From contig NC_134035.1 of assembly GCF_964204645.1 (NCBI RefSeq), positions 7,162,451 to 7,226,450 on the forward strand: DNA of 64,000 nucleotides. The letters run 5' to 3'. Below, in pieces: positions 6,504-14,900 of this stretch (positions are counted from its first letter, which is position 1; every line of letters starts with the position of its first letter). A model generated the notes under the pieces. The model ran no database searches, was not told where the DNA came from, and worked only from the letters and a program-made list of their open reading frames with translations. Source of the stretch: Tubulanus polymorphus. Its lineage: Eukaryota > Animalia > Nemertea. Position numbers and translations under genes: made by a program.

Positions 6504-7119
6504 GTATTTATAACTCATACCTTTTGAGCAGATATCAATCTTTGGTCTGGAAGACCGCTGAAAAATGTTAGGTGTTGGTCCAGGCTGCAGATTGATATGA
6601 TAGTGTAACTCATGTTGGTGAAATAAGTAATGCTAAAATACCGGTATTTAACATATTATTACAGAATTACATTATTACAGTTTAGCACATAATCAAAGCT
6701 CCGCCATTTCAATTTGAGTGTCATAAAATGCCTGATTATTTCTTGATTCAAAAGCTGATGATGTTCTGAGCAGTTAGATGTATAGCATTATATATACAGT
6801 AGACTGTTGGGACCACGAATATTCCCATTGAGTTGATGGGGTTTTAGGATCAAGGAAATTGAAGGTACCGGATACATATATTCTCATAGTAAAGTTGAAC
6901 ATTTTTTCTCCCGAGATACAATTAAAGTCTATTGTGATAGAAAAAACATTGGAAATATTTCTGAAAGCTAGTTTAGCGTGAAACAATAATGCTTTGGCCG
7001 TTGAATGACAGCATGATGATCAGATGGAATGCTGGTGTGATGTGATGAGTGACAGGAATCAATAATACTAATTCTTATCAGTTATTAGCAGAATATATTA
7101 TTATAATGAGTAAATATGA

Positions 7120-7122
<3 letters not shown>

Positions 7123-7190
<68 letters not shown>
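7123..7190. repeat. (TA)n microsatellite
   Basis: Perfect TA run of about 34 units. Confidence 0.98.
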
Positions 7191-7191
<1 letters not shown>

Positions 7192-8974
7192 CGTAAATAT
7201 TGTATATAAAGTGACGATGATAAGTGGTGTTACGCTGTGCTGCTGCTTGTATTGTGCGTTTGTATGGGAAACTTCTATTTTATAGACAGTTCAATGGTTC
7301 GATGAAAGTAATTTCTAACGCTTAAGTGTTTTTGTTTTCTAGGGCCTTCTCAATTATCAGGCATCATCCCAGTTTCTCAAAAGCCATAAACCCTTAAACC
7401 GTGGTGGAAAATGAGGATTAGACCTTAAAAAATACACTGGTCAAATTATGAAAGTATCACGGGGAGTAGTGTATTTTCAGAGTTGGTTGACTTAAAGTTA
7501 ACTTCAGAAATGAATTCCATTTATGACTCGGCTCAAGTTGAGTTCGGTGTATGGTACATGGTTAAAAAAGTAATTCAGAAAAATATCTGAGTTGGTCAGA
7601 TCCGACTTGGGTGGATTCTACTGTTTTGAAAACTTTGCCCTGGTTATCAATGGACTGATGTTTCTGTTAATGTATGCATGTTTATTTTAGACTGGTTCCT
7701 TTATGTACGTGATACCTCTCTATGTTTTCATAGGAGTTTTTGTGATTCGATTTACATTAGTTCGATTAAACCAGATTAGACAAATACGCAAGTGAATATT
7801 ACAGTTATTGTAATGACACGCTCTATGCCGTCGGCCGGCACAAGCCGTTGAACACCGATCGGCGCTGAACAATCTACTCACTTCCGCCGATAGATCACTC
7901 ATGCGGACCGTTTAACGATTTACATAATTGAACATAGCGAACGAACTAAACTGTCTGTGAATCGAATCGCTTCTGGGGTATGAAAGGAACGAGTCTAAGA
8001 TGGTGCTTTCTGTTGTTCTTATCGAATCCTATACTATAGCGCCGCCGTATTTTGTGAATAATGTAAAATAAACATGTATTGGCCTAGTTTTTCAATTACC
8101 TATTCAAGCGTTTTATGAGTTGTGAGATTTTTAAGGATAGTATCACCAGGATTTAAATGTTCATTACAGTCGAAGCTGTCGTCCCGCCTTGGAATTGAAT
8201 CCAGCATTGAATCTGTTTCATAATGGCAACATTCCGTATTACTAGATCATTAGGCACTTTCCCTATGTTCATACTAGCGCTGTCATTTCTGGGGATAGAA
8301 AGGGCTACGAGAAATCATCTCAACCTTTGGGAATTTCTTTTACAACGACGAAGCGAGCACCGAAGGGGGAGTTCTGGGGTCTCCAATTTATATGTTTTTG
8401 ACCGCTGTGCACTCAATCGGGACAGTTCCTCACTAGCTTTACTGCGGCAATATCATTTATTAACTTCGCGCCATATCCTATCAGATAGTTGTACGCCTTG
8501 AAATCAGCTGACACATGTATACGAAGTGTGGCTATATGTATACGTTCTGCTGCTTCGCGTAAATCCCGCGCTGTGGTGAAACCGCGTGGAGTGGGGCCAA
8601 TATGGTACAAAAGGGGTACGATACGGTCGGTACTAATGGGGCTTCAGCCGAGCGGATAGAAAACCGCAAATAAAAGAATTTGATTCGATATATGAATATC
8701 GCCGACTTTTTTATTGGTTTACTGATTGCGTGGCATTTGTCTCGTTAAGTATTGGGTCTAGTTGCTGATTTCTCCGAAGATACACTCGCAATACAATAAA
8801 CCAGTGTAACCTGAGGGAGGTCTCGCTCTTCCAATATAATCGCCATGGTAGTCAACAAGGACTGACTTCGCGGCATCCTCCAAAGCCAAAAATGACATAC
8901 AAAACGTAATTACTTGTTATTAAACCCACAATTCTATATCACTTTAAATCTAAAAATAAATCTGACCTTGCACT

Positions 8975-11900
8975 TCAAAGAATGTTACATGTTTTTGACT
9001 TTTTCGGTGGGTCGTTTTGTTTGGGTGGAGCTGGTTGTTTCACATTATTTTGCTGCGCATTGTTACTAGACACATTGTTGAACTGTGGAGTTTCCAGAAG
9101 TTTATCATTGTCCATATCATGGCTTTCCTCTGGCTTTTCCTTGACAGGACCTTTGGTGGATGGATTTGTAGCTTCGGGTTCTGTTACTGCCATTGCTTCG
9201 CGTGGTTTAGACACGATTGGAGATTCCTTGGATTCCTCTGTAACGCTGGGCTCCGGATTGTCCGTTGATTCCTCGAGAGGGGCCTTGGAATCTTGGGCAT
9301 CATTTTTGGCATCCGTTTTCTCGTCAACCGCTGCGCTCGAATCCTGGGGATCGTCCGCATATATTCTCAATTTTTCGAACAGTTGATCGAATGAATTTCC
9401 TGTCCAAGTTTCTTGAACATTTTCTTCGTGAGCAAAATCTATATAAAGCAACTCTGTGAATACCATGCTCATAGGACCGCCCGGTGGCCATCTTGTATCT
9501 TCTAACAATAAGGGAATAATCGGCTTCTTCAAGGCGTCGCACAGTGAAACCTCTTTACGACAATTTGCTGATTTGGAATATGTTTCAGTGACACACGATA
9601 CAACTACTCGACAGTTTCTAATTCCGCGGTCGATTTTATCGTACAGTGAGTCGCCGCCTCCCATCTGATAGATATCCATCCAGCAATGAAATCCTAGTTC
9701 AGTCAATCGGCGATACAGCCGTTTAATCTGAGGCTGTTTACCCCACTGGTAAGATATGAACACTTGCGCTGCTTCGGGCGGACTCTCCGCTGGAGATGTT
9801 ATCTGTAATATAGAACCATTCAAAAAGTCGTGAAGGATGACGCACCATAGGTTTCGATGAGAATTTACGACATATTCGAAATCAGATTCTAAATTTCATG
9901 TGTTAACCTGATATGTATACCTGATTCGATTTCGTCTTCTGATCTTCTCGAATGGGAAGAATTATCTCCTCCGGCTCGGGTTCCCACCAATTTCTGTACT
10001 CTATTCGATAGAAATGCGAATCAACATGATACACGGGGTGGATGGAGTCAATAGTTTTTTTTTAGTGTTTAAGCGCGGTACCTACCAGGATCGACAATTT
10101 CTTCTTCGGGCATTATCTTATTGAAACTGAGCTGCATGAGTAGTTCACTGAATTTCTCATCGTGCCAATTCCTTTCCCCTCTCCCCAGCGATCCCTTCCT
10201 CAGGTGCATGCTGATATACAGATATTCGCCGAATATGGGCCCCATTGATCCAGCTGGTGGCCACTGCACTCGCTCTAGTAGAATCGGGATGATGGGCTTG
10301 CCCAGATTGACAGCCAGGTTCACCTGAAAGACACAATTGTCCCCAGACACAGTGAGATCTCGAGTCTATGTACGTGCATTCTAGTAGGAGAATTTCACCC
10401 TATATACCAAAAGCCCGGGATTGGCATTTAATTCAAACTTGCAGAATAATATTCGATTCAATTCAATATTTCATATCTTAGATATTACGTTGTAAATCAT
10501 ATGATACACATGATATTTGAATTCGTAAATGAAGCACATTCGACGGTTGTTACCTCTCTGATACAATTTGGAGATTTCGCGTATTTCTCTGTAACGCAAC
10601 AAACGACGACTTTAGCTGCCCGAATTCCTTCGTCTATTTTGGCGTAGAGTTTATCGCCCCCTCCCATCTGACCGATGTCCATCCAACACTGAAATCCGGC
10701 CATTAGCAAATGCTTGCGAAGTAGCTTCACCTCTGGTTGATGGCTCCACTGGTAACTGAGGAAGACGGGTGGAGGCGAGGCATACTCTGGAGCCTCTTCG
10801 GTCACGACGTCCTCTGTATTGTCAAATATGTTATCTTAACTGCATGTTGTTTAAGGCTGTATGAAGCACCGTTATAATATTCAATATACAATTTTTATTG
10901 GTACCGGTACAGGCTTTGAGGTTTAATTTCTAGAGTATCGTGGTGGATTGTATTGTTTTTATGAACCAATCTCTCAATATCGCTACGGAGCGGTTGTAAC
11001 TTTTCGTCCAGCATTCGAGAAATCAATACAGAATACAAATGCGCTATCGGGTTTCTATCCGTTTCTAGTTGCCCATCGTGTATAAGGACAACCACGAGTT
11101 TGGAAACAGATAATGTAGATCTTTGCTTATCTCGAGAACTAGATTGGGTACAGTGTAACGTTTAAAGATGTGAGACCATTGCAAATACATGCTGCCGATT
11201 TTAATGTGTTTTGAATGTGTATGCTCCGAGTTAGGACAATTTAGTAGACTTACCAACATTTTTAAGAGCTTCCTCGATAACTATTGCAGCGTCCAATCTG
11301 TCGATTTCAACCAATATCTCCAAAACTGCATGGCTGGCTTCGCTGGTTTTATGCGTGGCAAACCATTCGCTAAGCAGTGACATACAGGGATCGTTTTGAG
11401 TCGCCCAGCCACGAATATCAGTCGGGTTATACCCGAGACGCTGGGCTAACAGGCGCCAGTCGTGTTCGGCTTCGGGGTTCAACAATGTTGAAACTTGTTT
11501 CGACCAAGCGGGTGCATTACTCACAGTCTACAAGAATTCACCATCAGAAATGGATATGGATCAAATATTGCTTTATTTTGTGTTAATTTTCTCGAATATA
11601 ATGTTATCCTCGACATCAAATGAAGCATTCTCTCCCTGCAGGGATCCGAACCTGATGACATCGAGACTCGCCCTGCCACACTAGCCCGAGTGCGCCGCTT
11701 ACATGCGAAGCTTAGATGGTGTCATTATTAGCCAATCAGATATGCCGTTTTATTCTAGTACGGGTTTTTCAATTTATAGTTTTTACGTAAAATTTGTCTC
11801 AGCGATTATACAATGGGCAATCTGATTAGTGCCGCAAGTTTTCCTTCAGCAAACCTGCGCACCCGGTCTAGTGTGGTAGGGTTTCATGCTGTTGCTGAAT

Positions 11901-14900
11901 ATAGCAATGCCAACAGGTTCGAATACCTGCCAGGGAGTATGTTAATGGCTCCTGTTCTTTCCGGCAACGCAGATACTTGTAAAAGAAAACATTTCAACCA
12001 TATATGTCTTGCACACAAAGAAAGGTAATCCTGATAGTGAAACAGGAACCGTAAGGACAGTTACTCAAAACCTAGTATACAATCTACATACCTTCATATC
12101 TATTTCTTCTACCTTTTCATCTAATTCGTCAACTTTATCGTCAAGATTATCCAGACGTTCGTCTGCGACGATCGCGGCTACAGCCAGTTTATCAACTTCT
12201 TCTTTGGTCTTATCAACATCTTCGGTCAGTTGATCAACATTATTTTCAGCCGTGGTAACTCTTGTGTCTAAATCATCGATATCTTCTTGATGTTTTTCAA
12301 CAGTTTTTACGATATTACCTAAGCTGTAGTCGTATTGATTCATTAAATTAAGCTTGTTACAATAATCCCGTTGGCGCTTAGTTATTGTATATGCATTTTA
12401 AGTTGTAAGGTATGACGAAAACCAGTTTTAAAACCCTTACACAACTGGCTAATGGTGGGAATATTTACCTTCGTCCTTCGATTATGTTGATTATATGTTC
12501 AACCGCTTGAGCAAGTCCTCCGTGCTTTTTTGCAAGCGCTTCGAACAGGTTCCGTTCCCTGGTCAGCAATGCCTTATATTCAACTCCGAACTGACCGACT
12601 GCACCAATTCCTGTTACACAGGTTTGAGCATCATCTGTATTCTTTTTCACCCAGTCTATCAAAGCGTTGAATACCTTTTCTGCTACAGGAGAGGGTCTCT
12701 GATAAAAACAATTTAAGTTAAGTGAAGTATCATACATGTCGTGGTCAAGAAACTAGCTAAATATAGTGTTTCATACATTCTTTGTAAACGGGGCATATTA
12801 AACTCCTCGCAAAACCAACTCCGACTGTCTTTTCCAACGTCCCCTTAGACTACACCGCATATAAGACTGTTACACTGTGATCAGACCAAATAGCCAATTA
12901 CCCCTCGGATAGGAGGAGCATAGAAGCCATGACATAAAATGTCAGAAAGTTTAGAGCACTCCAAACATTCGCCTAATCCATATCTTTCAATTTAGAGCCG
13001 TTGCGATGAGTTAATACTTGTAGATATCTTTTAATTAAACTTAGCAAACCTTTTTCGAATTTTTAACTATGCTAGCAAGCATGTAAGGCAACATGGCAGA
13101 TTTCACTTGACTCGCTCCGATCTCTTTTGTTATGATATCCACAGCACTCGGTGATATCGGCGACGGGTCCTTCTGCGCAAGCGTGTTCAACACCATAATC
13201 GCCGATCCGAACCTCGATGGGTCGTTGAAGTCGTGTTTCATTATTTGGTCGATCATTTCTTCTTTTATTATCTGCAGTAGGAGAATTCATAGGCGAGTGT
13301 TATCTCAAAAATTTGTGATAAAAAGATTATCCCATAGGTTTCACAATTGCTGGAATACATAACCGCCTCCCAATATAAGGCAAACGTAATGGTATGATTT
13401 TCAAAATGGACGCTATCATGGCTGCCTACTACCCGATGGTTTGGGCTCATGAAGCGGTTCATCTATAAAGTTCCTTGAGATATTATCCAAACGAACTGAG
13501 AAAATGATTTAGAAAAGTTAAGCAGAGAGATGATTTAGAAAAGGCAAACCACGTGGACTTCGTTCAACAGAAGGTGGCTCTATGTTTGTCTTTGGAGGTA
13601 ATTTTGAGAGTTGGAAATACTGGTATTTAGATAGAACTTGAAACATACTGACGGATTCTCACTCGCTATGGCGTTCAGTAAAATAGCCCAGTATTGTCTG
13701 CAGTCTCCTTTCGCAACCGCTTGAAGCTCGTCTAACTTAGCTTCGACAGGCTTCGGACATTCGGGATACACGGCAGCGATTACACCTAAAATCACGATTC
13801 GTTTGAATAAATATTTCGAGTGTTTCAATATCATTCGATTATTACATTATATGTCTCATGTATTTTACCGAATAGATCAGTTTTTTCGTCCACAATTACT
13901 AATCCTATGATTTCATTCAATATTTTCGCTAATATCACTGGTTGAGTTCGTGATATTAGTTCTAAAACTGTTTTCATACAGTTCGACAGATCTTCGTCCT
14001 CGTCGTTTAGTAGTTTAACTATGTGTCCGAAAAGTGGTTCGAGTACTTGCAGTGTACAGCTCTGAGCGTGCTACAATATACAAAACAATAAGCCTTTCGA
14101 ATTGAATCCTGTCCCATTTCGAACACTAGGCTCTGCTCTGTTGATGTTACGTCAACTAGTCCTACAGAGCCGAGCGATCATTTTCCAACAAAAATTAAGG
14201 GTCTTTTTAAATCTAAGATGATCGTTCTTATTAATTTCACGATAACTTCTATGAATTCATGAAATAGAGGACATCCACAACGTTCATCATTTTTACAATT
14301 GGTGTAAGGGGTACCTTAGAAGTATAAACAGGTAAGCATTGTAATGTCAATAGGCCATACGTATTTTTGTTGCCGCTTGAATAGTCCATATAGTCACGCG
14401 TTAGACATTGCTCGTAGATATAAGTGAAAGACTCACTATAGGCCATCAGCTCAGTACCATCTCTATAATTGATGATAAAGATAACAACTGTACAAAAGAC
14501 GTTCTTATTTTAACAATGATAATATGGAATTAATACCACTTTCACAGTTGTGAGTTAGGATTTGTAAACTTTGTAAATGTTGGGGAATATGAACCTCTCC
14601 TCTGCAACCATGGATAGGTCTAGGTTTTATACGATGATTTTTCTTAAATGAAACTCACTCGCAGACCTTGAACACAGCGTCGAGCAGGTGACTAACCACT
14701 TTATGGCACCAACCAATCTCAAAATCAAAATCCTCCTTTATCAAACGCGCTAATGTTGTAACCACATCCTTTATGAAGTGTTTATGTTTCTGTAAGATAT
14801 TCATCGTCAGTTTCATCTTTCATTCTTTTAGAAATTAACAGAGTATTTTATGTAGTGCAGTTACCTTTAAATCGACGAATTCGCACGTTTCTCTCGCGAT

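What the first reader, a model, noticed from the sequence alone, without database searches (positions are those of the whole stretch)
9360..10770. Both tandem TIR domains retain the NADase catalytic glutamate and look TIR_2/bacterial-type
Seen: TIR1 reads YAKSPNCIRE-V (E at 10556-10554) and TIR2 reads YSKSANCRKE-V (E at 9553-9551). Both have VF[LI]SY and a W-M-D...GGGD BB-loop region. Established: the alphaC Glu is catalytic in SARM1, plant TNL and bacterial Thoeris-type TIRs, and it is generally absent or non-functional in TLR/MyD88 scaffold TIRs. TIR NADases need head-to-tail TIR-TIR contact to form the active site. Inference: the covalent TIR tandem could pre-form a composite active site that cleaves NAD+ or makes cyclic ADPR-type signals.
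Basis: partly seen in the sequence, partly recalled or inferred. Interest (0 to 1): 0.82.

Follow-up and report, generated by a model that had tools for sequence, protein, structure and literature searches.

The report
Death–TIR–TIR gene with intact NADase-type pockets
An expressed invertebrate immune-type gene (Death domain, two TIR domains, lipid-anchor tail) keeps the residues of NAD+-cleaving TIR enzymes in both TIRs, so it is probably an enzyme rather than a passive adaptor, but it is one more member of a catalogued family and of a recently published pattern.

Summary
On the minus strand, a spliced and expressed gene encodes Death – TIR1 – linker – TIR2 – low-complexity tail – CaaX. The Glu codons lie exactly where stated (10556-10554 and 9553-9551).

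Profile alignments place the family Glu on human SARM1 E642 and Cat1 E74. They also place the family's Ser, Asp and Ser on other mutation-tested pocket residues. The AlphaFold model of TIR2 (pLDDT 90.5) puts the Glu on helix alphaC.

By sequence, both TIRs belong with SARM1 and bacterial TIRs (Pfam TIR_2), not with TLR/MyD88 TIRs. By fold alone the two classes cannot be told apart.

The gene is the single-copy ortholog of ecTIR-DC family 6, an invertebrate family that is catalogued but has not been tested biochemically. Across 263 related domains, TIR2 keeps the Glu in 170 of 171, while TIR1 keeps it in 69 of 92. TIR2 is therefore the obligate catalytic candidate. TIR1 is intact here but has degenerated in some lineages.

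The tandem model has pTM 0.51 and a disordered linker.

A 2026 preprint already reports that most non-TLR animal TIRs keep this Glu and that about a fifth of those tested are active. This is a new member of a known kind. No enzyme activity has been shown for it.

The parts
11254..11527 (-). Death-domain exon
   Evidence: Pfam Death, E=1.1e-11. The exon ends come from the spliced contig. It is 73% identical to the oyster orthologs.
10554..10813 (-). TIR1 exon a: betaA through alphaC, ending on the Glu codon
   Evidence: Pfam TIR_2, E=1.3e-18. The exon ends come from the spliced contig. phmmer finds PdTIR and SARM1 TIR.
10554..10556 (-). TIR1 Glu codon (GAG), equivalent to SARM1 E642 and Cat1 E74
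   Evidence: Read from the sequence. The family TIR1 profile aligns this column to SARM1 chain residue 86, which is E642.
10653..10685 (-). TIR1 betaB/BB-loop region, W-M-D-I-G-Q-M-G-G-G-D
10324..10553 (-). Phase-0 GT..AG intron directly after the TIR1 Glu codon
   Evidence: Joint 10321/10552 (cut +2) in the spliced contig.
10086..10323 (-). TIR1 exon b (VNLAVNLGKPIIP... to ...IVDPG)
   Evidence: tblastn matches orthologs at 55-58% identity.
9921..10000 (-). Linker mini-exon carrying the conserved Y-x-N-W-x-x-P motif
   Evidence: The consensus of tandem alignment A2 shows the motif.
9344..9781 (-). TIR2 domain, 146 aa, lying inside the last exon
   Evidence: Pfam TIR_2, E=7.8e-24. AlphaFold model: pLDDT 90.5, pTM 0.86. 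Fold matches to SPARTA, SARM1 and AbTIR.
9551..9553 (-). TIR2 Glu codon (GAG), residue 77 of the modelled domain, on helix alphaC
   Evidence: It aligns with Cat1 E74 and with the WPQKE Glu of PdTIR. It is kept in 170 of 171 TIR2-clade domains.
9650..9682 (-). TIR2 betaB/BB-loop region, W-M-D-I-Y-Q-M-G-G-G-D
   Evidence: GGGD is kept in 169-170 of 171 domains.
8975..9802 (-). Last coding exon: TIR2, a low-complexity tail, C-terminal CNIL (CaaX, 8978-8989) and the stop codon (8975-8977)
   Evidence: Of the first 120 homologues, 111 end in C-a-a-X.

Best explanation
This is the single-copy ortholog of the invertebrate 'ecTIR-DC family 6' gene. Its layout is a long N-terminal helical region, a coiled coil, a Death domain, TIR1, a linker of about 55 residues, TIR2, a low-complexity tail and a CaaX box.

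Both TIR domains carry the complete pocket signature of enzymatic TIRs: the betaA Ser, the betaB Asp, a Gly-rich BB loop, the Ser before alphaC, and the alphaC Glu.

The most likely mechanism is inferred, not shown. The protein would sit on a membrane through its prenylated tail. Its Death domain and coiled coil would cluster it on a signal, and that clustering would bring TIR domains head-to-tail. At least TIR2 would then cleave NAD+, either depleting it or producing ADPR or cADPR-type products. TIR2 is the obligate catalytic unit. TIR1 is intact in this animal and may be active too, or it may serve mainly as the partner that completes a neighbouring site.
For: - **Gene and expression.** A spliced contig with four GT..AG introns covers the region.
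- **Domains.** Pfam finds Death and two TIR_2 domains.
- **Catalytic equivalence.** The family profile aligns its Glu to SARM1 E642. The numbering offset of 556 was checked on S567. The Ser of F[IL]SYQW aligns to SARM1 S567. That Ser is required for activity and lies 2.6 A from the Glu (10.1101/2025.04.09.647920).
- **Cat1 pocket residues.** The same columns align to Cat1 S7, D33, S68 and E74. With N10, K121 and Y122, these line the solved NAD pocket. Alanine substitutions at N10, D33, S68, E74, K121 and Y122 abolish function; S7 was not mutated (PMC12162218).
- **Structure.** The Glu sits on helix 72-83 of a model with pLDDT 90.5. SARM1 residues 561-700 superpose on model residues 4-141 with Z 16.3 and rmsd 2.4.
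- **Selection.** In a tree of 263 domains, TIR1 and TIR2 form separate clades with support 0.98 and 0.95. The TIR2 clade keeps Glu in 170/171, Ser in 167/168, Asp in 169/171, Ser in 169/171 and GGGD in about 170/171. The TIR1 clade keeps Glu in 69/92.
- **Family spread.** Homologues occur in molluscs, annelids, bryozoans, rotifers, flatworms, echinoderms, hemichordates and amphioxus.
- **Oligomerisation and anchoring.** The Death domain and coiled coil are seen. A CaaX box ends 111 of the first 120 homologues.
- **Tested relatives.** By eye, the closest experimentally tested TIRs share the SYQW / WMD / [NS]-C-x-x-E signature. The coelacanth TIR depletes NAD+ and the herring TIR makes cADPR in E. 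coli, according to Hurieva et al. 2026 Table S4.
Against: - No activity has been measured for any member of this family. None of the 154 TIRs ordered by Hurieva et al. carries this family's motifs. Only 12 of the 61 animal TIRs with the Glu were active in that screen.
- A Glu at this position is not sufficient. TLR2 and IL-1R9/10 have it but are inactive.
- The aromatic residue four positions before the Glu (SARM1 W638, AbTIR W204, Cat1 W70) is an almost invariant Asn here.
- Death plus TIR is also the MyD88 adaptor layout, and the published guess for this family is a TLR adaptor (PMC6836662).
- I could not inspect model coordinates, so the side-chain orientation of the Glu is unknown.
Confidence: 0.55

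Rival explanations
1. It is a pure scaffold or adaptor. Like MyD88, the protein would use its Death domain and TIRs only for protein-protein assembly downstream of Toll-like receptors. The conserved Glu, Ser and Asp would be structural or interface residues.
For: It has the Death + TIR layout. The literature speculates an adaptor role and reports co-expression with TLRs in bivalve gills (PMC6836662; PMC5549309). Fold similarity to MyD88 TIR (Z 16.3) equals that to SARM1. Most Glu-bearing animal TIRs were inactive in E. coli.
Against: MyD88 has Phe at the Glu position (Hurieva Table S2). No TLR, MyD88 or IL-1R chain is found by the family profiles at E<=0.01, whereas Cat1, PdTIR, AbTIR, SARM1 and SPARTA are. 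Four or five separate pocket positions are nearly invariant in TIR2 across phyla. In the lineages where TIR1 loses its Glu, those positions relax together. That pattern fits a dead versus live enzyme better than an interface.
Confidence: 0.25
2. The two covalently linked TIRs pack against each other within one chain. That forms a ready-made head-to-tail composite active site, so the enzyme needs no higher-order assembly.
For: TIR active sites are built from two TIRs; the Cat1 pocket uses K121 and Y122 from the second TIR. Both TIRs keep the BB-loop glycines and an aromatic residue at the Cat1 Y122 column (Tyr or Phe). Loss of the Glu from TIR1 alone is compatible with a fixed division of labour.
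Against: The AlphaFold tandem model gives pTM 0.51, although both domains have pLDDT above 90. Linker residues 169-196 fall below pLDDT 50. The roughly 55-residue linker, the upstream Death domain and the coiled coil point instead to regulated intermolecular clustering. A constitutively formed site would be a constitutive NAD+ sink.
Confidence: 0.1
3. The TIRs act on a substrate other than NAD+. [quoted passage not shown]
For: The Cys three residues before the Glu is almost invariant here, in 166/171 TIR2 and 90/92 TIR1 domains. The equivalent L7 C132 is needed for the synthetase activity but not for NADase activity (10.1101/2021.11.09.467869).
Against: No nucleic-acid-binding feature was seen. 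That activity is reported only for plant TIRs. The basic alphaD residues were not examined here.
Confidence: 0.07

Closest known systems
ecTIR-DC family 6 (Gerdol et al. 2017, Dev Comp Immunol 70:145, as described in Yuen et al. 2019, PMC6836662). Examples: oyster LOC105336991 / LOC128175812, 1,451 aa.
   Same: Central Death domain followed by two TIR domains, behind a long N-terminal region. Found only in invertebrates. The window maps colinearly to the oyster protein from about 18600 down to 9230. Identity is 73% in the Death domain and 67-78% in TIR1.
   Different: Nothing defining differs; this is an ortholog in another species. Pfam does not detect the N-terminal 'ARM-like' repeats here or in the oyster protein. 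The literature treats the family as a putative adaptor. In the papers I could read, it does not mention the catalytic-type pocket or the CaaX tail.
SARM1 TIR domain (human E642, S567)
   Same: TIR_2-class sequence. The VF-I-S-Y start, the Ser, the Asp after betaB and the alphaC Glu all align. Z is 16.3 with rmsd 2.4 over 127 residues. Activity depends on clustering by other domains.
   Different: There are no ARM-SAM-SAM domains; the Death domain and coiled coil take their place. There are two TIRs, not one. Asn replaces W638. SARM1 has a four-residue insertion before the Glu. The BB loop is QMGGGD rather than EKLEAGKFED. The protein has a CaaX tail. A separate ARM-TIR-SAM gene was noted elsewhere in this genome (s1-496761, not checked).
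Bacterial NADase TIRs: Cat1 (9mud), PdTIR (3h16), AbTIR (7uwg/8g83), SPARTA TIR-APAZ
   Same: These are the best PDB sequence matches: Cat1 at 5e-11, PdTIR at 3e-8 and AbTIR at 4e-8. Cat1 pocket residues S7, D33, S68 and E74 are identical in both window TIRs. Foldseek ranks SPARTA and SARM1 first.
   Different: Identity is only about 20%. This is an animal gene with introns and animal-only relatives. It shows no sign of recent transfer. The Trp before the Glu is missing.
Coelacanth H2ZXV5 and herring A0A6P8EVF3 TIR-only proteins tested by Hurieva et al. 2026
   Same: Compared by eye, they share the LSYQW, WMD, S-x-[NS]-C-x-x-E and IIP motifs without gaps through betaD. One depletes NAD+ and the other makes cADPR in E. 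coli.
   Different: They are short single-TIR proteins without a Death domain, a tandem or a CaaX box. The similarity was judged by eye from the supplementary table, not computed.
MyD88
   Same: A Death domain lies N-terminal to a TIR, with similar fold scores.
   Different: MyD88 has a single TIR of the PF01582 class, with Phe at the Glu position. The family profiles do not find it.

Membership tests
Enzymatic (NAD+-cleaving) TIR domains | TIR (flavodoxin-like) fold | tested here: met
   The TIR2 model has pLDDT 90.5 and pTM 0.86. Foldseek probability is 1.00 to SPARTA, SARM1 and AbTIR. VIA Z is 14.5-18. TIR1 was judged from the oyster ortholog model.
Enzymatic (NAD+-cleaving) TIR domains | Glu on helix alphaC at the position of SARM1 E642, AbTIR E208 and Cat1 E74 | tested here: met
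   HMMER alignments are explicit. The Glu lies in model helix 72-83. Both window TIRs have it. Side-chain orientation could not be inspected.
Enzymatic (NAD+-cleaving) TIR domains | Conserved Ser next to the Glu in space (SARM1 S567, SNC1 S26, Cat1 S7) | tested here: met
   The Ser of VF[LI]SYQW aligns to SARM1 S567 and Cat1 S7. It is kept in 167/168 TIR2 and 83/87 TIR1 domains.
Enzymatic (NAD+-cleaving) TIR domains | Asp after betaB (Cat1 D33, SARM1 D594) and Ser before alphaC (Cat1 S68) | tested here: met
   The D of WMD and the S of K-S-x-N-C align to these residues. Both are nearly invariant. The Cat1 D33A and S68A mutants are defective.
Enzymatic (NAD+-cleaving) TIR domains | Aromatic residue four positions before the Glu (SARM1 W638, AbTIR W204, Cat1 W70) | tested here: not met
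   Both window TIRs have Asn here, as do 165/171 TIR2-clade domains. This is not disqualifying. Tested TIRs with N or S at this position are active according to Hurieva Table S4.
Enzymatic (NAD+-cleaving) TIR domains | Glu-dependent NAD+ consumption or cADPR-isomer production | not testable with these tools
   This needs expression and LC-MS or an etheno-NAD assay.
ecTIR-DC family 6 | Central Death domain followed by two TIR domains in one protein | tested here: met
   Pfam hits. The spliced contig joins the exons. Orthologs show the same layout.
ecTIR-DC family 6 | Long N-terminal region with ARM-like repeats | tested here: inconclusive
   The spliced contig carries 2,874 nt upstream of the Death exon. 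The region maps colinearly, though weakly, to the 1,451-aa oyster protein. Pfam gives no ARM/HEAT hit here or in the oyster protein.
ecTIR-DC family 6 | Present across invertebrate phyla, absent from vertebrates | tested here: met
   Named hits come from molluscs, annelid, bryozoan, rotifers, flatworm, echinoderms, hemichordate and amphioxus, and none from a vertebrate or arthropod. The search had length limits, so absence is not proven.
MyD88 | Death domain plus a single PF01582-type TIR that lacks the Glu | tested here: not met
   There are two TIR_2 domains, both with the Glu. MyD88 has Phe at that position.
SARM1 | ARM - SAM - SAM - TIR architecture | tested here: not met
   No SAM or ARM hit in the gene or its orthologs, which carry a Death domain instead.
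Thoeris ThsB | Match to ThsB_TIR (PF08937) above its cutoff | tested here: not met
   The window TIRs give no hit at E<=0.01. A few orthologs give only weak hits near the cutoff, with no matched stretch passing on its own.

The most novel reading that the evidence does not exclude
ecTIR-DC family 6 would be a bilaterian-wide NAD+-consuming or cADPR-signalling executor that is independent of SARM1. It would be anchored by a prenyl group, nucleated by its Death domain, and asymmetric. TIR2 would be the obligate catalytic subunit. TIR1 would be a partner that completes the site and has become a dead pseudo-enzyme several times. The module would have been lost from vertebrates and ecdysozoans.
Probability: 0.3. 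Interest if true: 0.65.

Novelty: new member of a known kind. Interest (0 to 1): 0.38.

Why it matters
If the family is enzymatic, a Death-domain 'adaptor' conserved from rotifers to amphioxus would be a second animal TIR NADase lineage beside SARM1. It would link death-fold assembly directly to NAD+ metabolism or cADPR-type signalling at a membrane.

The contrast between TIR2 (Glu in 170/171) and TIR1 (Glu in 69/92) gives a clear design for a first experiment: mutate each Glu separately. As it stands, the result mainly adds one well-annotated example to a pattern published in 2026.

Tried and rejected
- **C-terminal-half profile to bring SARM1 into the printed alignments (A3).** Only Cat1 was found, at E=0.02. 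A TIR1-only profile solved the problem instead.
- **Fold comparison to separate enzyme-type from scaffold-type TIRs.** It does not discriminate. TRR-2, MyD88 and IL-1RAcP score like SARM1 and SPARTA.
- **Tandem packing by AlphaFold.** No confident interdomain arrangement came out.
- **Gerdol et al. 2017.** The paper is not held. The family number comes second-hand from PMC6836662 and PMC5549309.
- **Bacterial origin or recent transfer.** Rejected. The gene has four spliceosomal introns and its close relatives are animal. The one 'bacterial' close hit (P0113, a Sedimenticola MAG) ends in CSIL with an animal-like tail and looks like host contamination.
- **Run X5, labelled as possible RNA.** It held nothing of the stretch.
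- **The costly representative-protein search.** Not used, because the family was already clear.
- The window's own TIR1, which an intron splits, and its whole tandem were never sent joined to a search or fold tool. Exons were searched one at a time by reference. The Saccostrea ortholog (P0173:326-673) stood in for the tandem model.
Full report
**What is in the sequence**

The window comes from an animal genome: a 268-Mb assembly with spliceosomal introns, whose closest relatives for this gene are molluscan. On the minus strand the finding's region holds three Pfam-recognisable coding blocks:
- a Death domain (11231-11524, E=1.1e-11);
- the first part of a TIR (10497-10805, TIR_2 E=1.3e-18);
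- a complete TIR in a 282-codon open frame (8975-9823, TIR_2 E=7.8e-24).

Pfam's TLR-type model (PF01582) scores far lower, at 1e-6 and 4e-4.

- ...YAKSPNCIRE, with GAG at 10556-10554;
- ...YSKSANCRKEV, with GAG at 9553-9551;
- VFLSY and VFISY;
- CWMDIGQMGGGD and CWMDIYQMGGGD.

**Gene model and expression**

A 4,579-nt contig in public run X2, from the same organism label, lies on the stretch in five pieces: 8952-9802, 9921-10000, 10086-10323, 10554-10813 and 11254-~11527. The four skipped parts all read GT..AG on the minus strand. The contig continues for 2,874 nt upstream of the Death exon. Runs X3 and X4 hold unspliced pieces. The kind of library is not on record, so 'transcribed' rests on the four precise canonical excisions.

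One intron (10324-10553, phase 0) starts immediately after the TIR1 Glu codon, and the next exon begins VNLAVNLGKPIIP. The product reads Death – TIR1 – mini-exon linker (E-Y-R-N-W-W-E-P...) – TIR2 – low-complexity tail – CNIL – stop.

A 1,451-aa oyster protein (LOC105336991 / LOC128175812) maps colinearly onto the window from about 18600 to 9230. The whole gene therefore spans roughly 8952 to at least 18600. The genome holds only this one copy, plus two more distant TIR_2 loci on another contig.

**Is the Glu the catalytic one?**

- **SARM1.** A profile of 28 orthologous TIR1 domains finds human SARM1 TIR at E=1.3e-7 and prints the alignment. The family's r-E-v aligns with SARM1 h-K-E-I-V. I counted along the chain and fixed the offset (556) on the VFISY serine. 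That serine is S567 according to 10.1101/2025.04.09.647920. With that offset, the aligned Glu is E642.
- **The nearby serine.** The same paper reports that this serine is required for activity and lies 2.6 A from the Glu. Both window TIRs have it.
- **Cat1.** A profile of 104 TIR2 and TIR1 domains finds the CRISPR-associated TIR Cat1 at 5e-11. Counted along that alignment, the family's S, D, S and E fall on Cat1 S7, D33, S68 and E74. [quoted passage not shown] It shows that the N10A, D33A, S68A, E74A, K121A and Y122A mutants are defective (PMC12162218). The Cat1 Y122 column is Tyr in both window TIRs, but the alignment there has low posterior probability.
- **PdTIR.** PdTIR aligns its WPQKE on CRKE.
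- **Model.** The AlphaFold model of the window's TIR2 (pLDDT 90.5, pTM 0.86) puts residue 77, the Glu, in helix 72-83, which is alphaC. SARM1 residues 561-700 superpose on model residues 4-141 with Z 16.3 and rmsd 2.4 A.

I could not read coordinates, so the side-chain direction is not known. This matters because TLR2 and IL-1R9/10 have the Glu but point it outward.

**'Bacterial-type'?**

By sequence, yes, in the sense of the TIR_2 class that also contains SARM1. Every PDB chain found at E<=0.01 belongs to this group:
- bacterial TIRs: Cat1, PdTIR, AbTIR, SPARTA TIR-APAZ, TcpB, TIR-SAVED, and a bacterial SEFIR protein;
- animal: SARM1;
- plant: Roq1 and AtTIR.

None is a TLR, MyD88, MAL or IL-1R chain.

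By fold, no distinction can be drawn. The top VIA Z-scores are Hydra TRR-2 at 18.0, SPARTA at 17.6, SARM1 at 16.3, MyD88 at 16.3 and IL-1RAcPb at 16.2.

One signature difference from the classical enzymes stands out. The aromatic residue four positions before the Glu (SARM1 W638, AbTIR W204, Cat1 W70) is Asn in both window TIRs. The Cys three positions before the Glu, as in plant TIRs, is kept.

**What the relatives show**

Two word-index searches returned 207 distinct proteins. The named ones come from:
- bivalves and gastropods;
- an annelid and a bryozoan;
- bdelloid rotifers and a flatworm;
- sea urchins and a sea cucumber;
- an acorn worm and amphioxus.

No vertebrate or arthropod was named. 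Those long enough show Death – TIR_2 – TIR_2. Of the first 120 hits, 111 end in C-a-a-X.

I cut out every TIR domain and aligned 263 complete ones. In the tree, TIR1 and TIR2 form two clades with support 0.98 and 0.95, so the duplication predates the bilaterian phyla sampled. Column counts by clade are as follows:

| Column | TIR2 clade | TIR1 clade |
|---|---|---|
| Glu | 170/171 | 69/92 (Gln 18, His 2, others 3) |
| betaA Ser | 167/168 | 83/87 |
| Asp | 169/171 | 85/87 |
| Pre-alphaC Ser | 169/171 | 78/92 |
| Asp that ends GGGD | 169/171 | 68/92 |
| Asn at -4 | 165/171 | 72/92 |
| Cys at -3 | 166/171 | 90/92 |

Parsimony gives about seven Glu/non-Glu changes on the tree. In the sequences whose TIR1 carries Gln, the neighbouring pocket columns change too (S to D, N to T, loss of the Asp after GGG).

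This is what one expects if TIR2 is an enzyme everywhere, while TIR1 is an enzyme or partner that has repeatedly become catalytically dead. The window's TIR1 keeps every one of these residues, as do the TIR1 domains of the named mollusc, annelid, bryozoan, echinoderm, hemichordate and amphioxus orthologs.

**The tandem idea**

The window's TIR1 is split by an intron, and a joined model may not be sent to the tools. I therefore modelled the tandem of the Saccostrea ortholog (P0173:326-673) with 34 aligned tandems. Each TIR is confident, with pLDDT mostly above 90. However, pTM is 0.51 and linker residues 169-196 fall below pLDDT 50, so AlphaFold does not place the two domains against each other.

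This does not exclude an intrachain site, but it gives the idea no support. The Death domain and coiled coil upstream are the obvious clustering devices, just as the SAM domains are for SARM1.

**What is already known**

Yuen et al. [quoted passage not shown] TIR domains'. They call this characteristic of ecTIR-DC family 6 of Gerdol et al. 2017, and they guess at a role in relaying TLR signals (PMC6836662). A mussel atlas reports family 6 as gill-enriched (PMC5549309). ecTIR-DC proteins are said to be absent from vertebrates (PMC6321704).

Hurieva et al. (bioRxiv 2026, 10.64898/2026.04.20.719644) show that most non-TLR animal TIRs keep the Glu. They tested 61 such animal TIRs in E. coli and found 12 active, most of them making cADPR. 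The TLR4 TIR was among the active ones.

Their table of ordered sequences contains none with this family's motifs, so the family appears untested. By eye, the nearest entries are a coelacanth TIR (S-R-N-C-K-K-E), which depleted NAD+, and a herring TIR (S-R-S-C-K-K-E), which made cADPR. A non-aromatic residue before the Glu is therefore compatible with activity.

No paper in the held library links ecTIR-DC proteins with NADase activity. That is a statement about this library only.

**Verdict**

Both TIRs carry an intact enzyme-type pocket and belong to the SARM1/bacterial sequence class, and NAD+ cleavage by at least TIR2 is the best-supported mechanism (my estimate is 0.55). The pre-formed intrachain site is unsupported, and the premise about TLR TIRs is outdated.

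The gene is an ortholog of a catalogued family, and Glu retention in such animal TIRs is now a published generalisation. I therefore class this as a new member of a known kind.

- the explicit residue mapping to SARM1 and Cat1;
- the TIR2-versus-TIR1 asymmetry;
- the near-universal CaaX tail;
- the confirmed splice structure.

Noticed in passing
window 8978-8989 (-), and homologues P0001-P0120: The protein ends in CNIL, a CaaX box. Of the first 120 homologues, 111 also end in C-a-a-X, mostly with L, S or M last. Prenyl anchoring therefore looks like a family feature. It is not mentioned in the papers I could read.
   Followed up: partly
window 9921-10000 (-): The 80-nt mini-exon between the TIRs encodes a Y-x-N-W-x-x-P motif. 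The motif is conserved across phyla inside a linker that is otherwise variable and predicted to be disordered (alignment A2). It may be a docking or regulatory motif.
   Followed up: no
P0113: A protein filed under a Sedimenticola metagenome-assembled genome is 63% identical to TIR2. It carries the animal-style low-complexity tail and ends in CSIL. It looks like host (animal) DNA binned into a bacterial MAG.
   Followed up: no
G000 contig C2, loci L003-L005 (about 30.24 Mb) and L004 (28.29 Mb): Two further TIR_2-type loci in the same genome match the TIR2 query at 40-60% identity. One match contains a TAG.
   Followed up: no
window 10324-10553 (-): TIR1 is interrupted by a phase-0 intron placed exactly after its catalytic-position Glu codon, whereas TIR2 has no intron. 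Whether orthologs share this intron position was not checked.
   Followed up: no
window 9151, 9996, 10441, 11330 and others: Single-letter differences separate the window from contigs of runs X2-X4, for example G>A at 9996 and A>G at 11330 in all three runs. They are probably allelic variation.
   Followed up: no
window about 7049-7285 (+): A long (TA)-type microsatellite reads as a run of I-Y-I-Y in one frame, downstream of the gene's 3' end.
   Followed up: no
window 12092-12349 (-): The exon just upstream of the Death exon is a heptad-rich coiled coil. It gives many weak coiled-coil Pfam hits and aligns to the same position in orthologs.
   Followed up: partly
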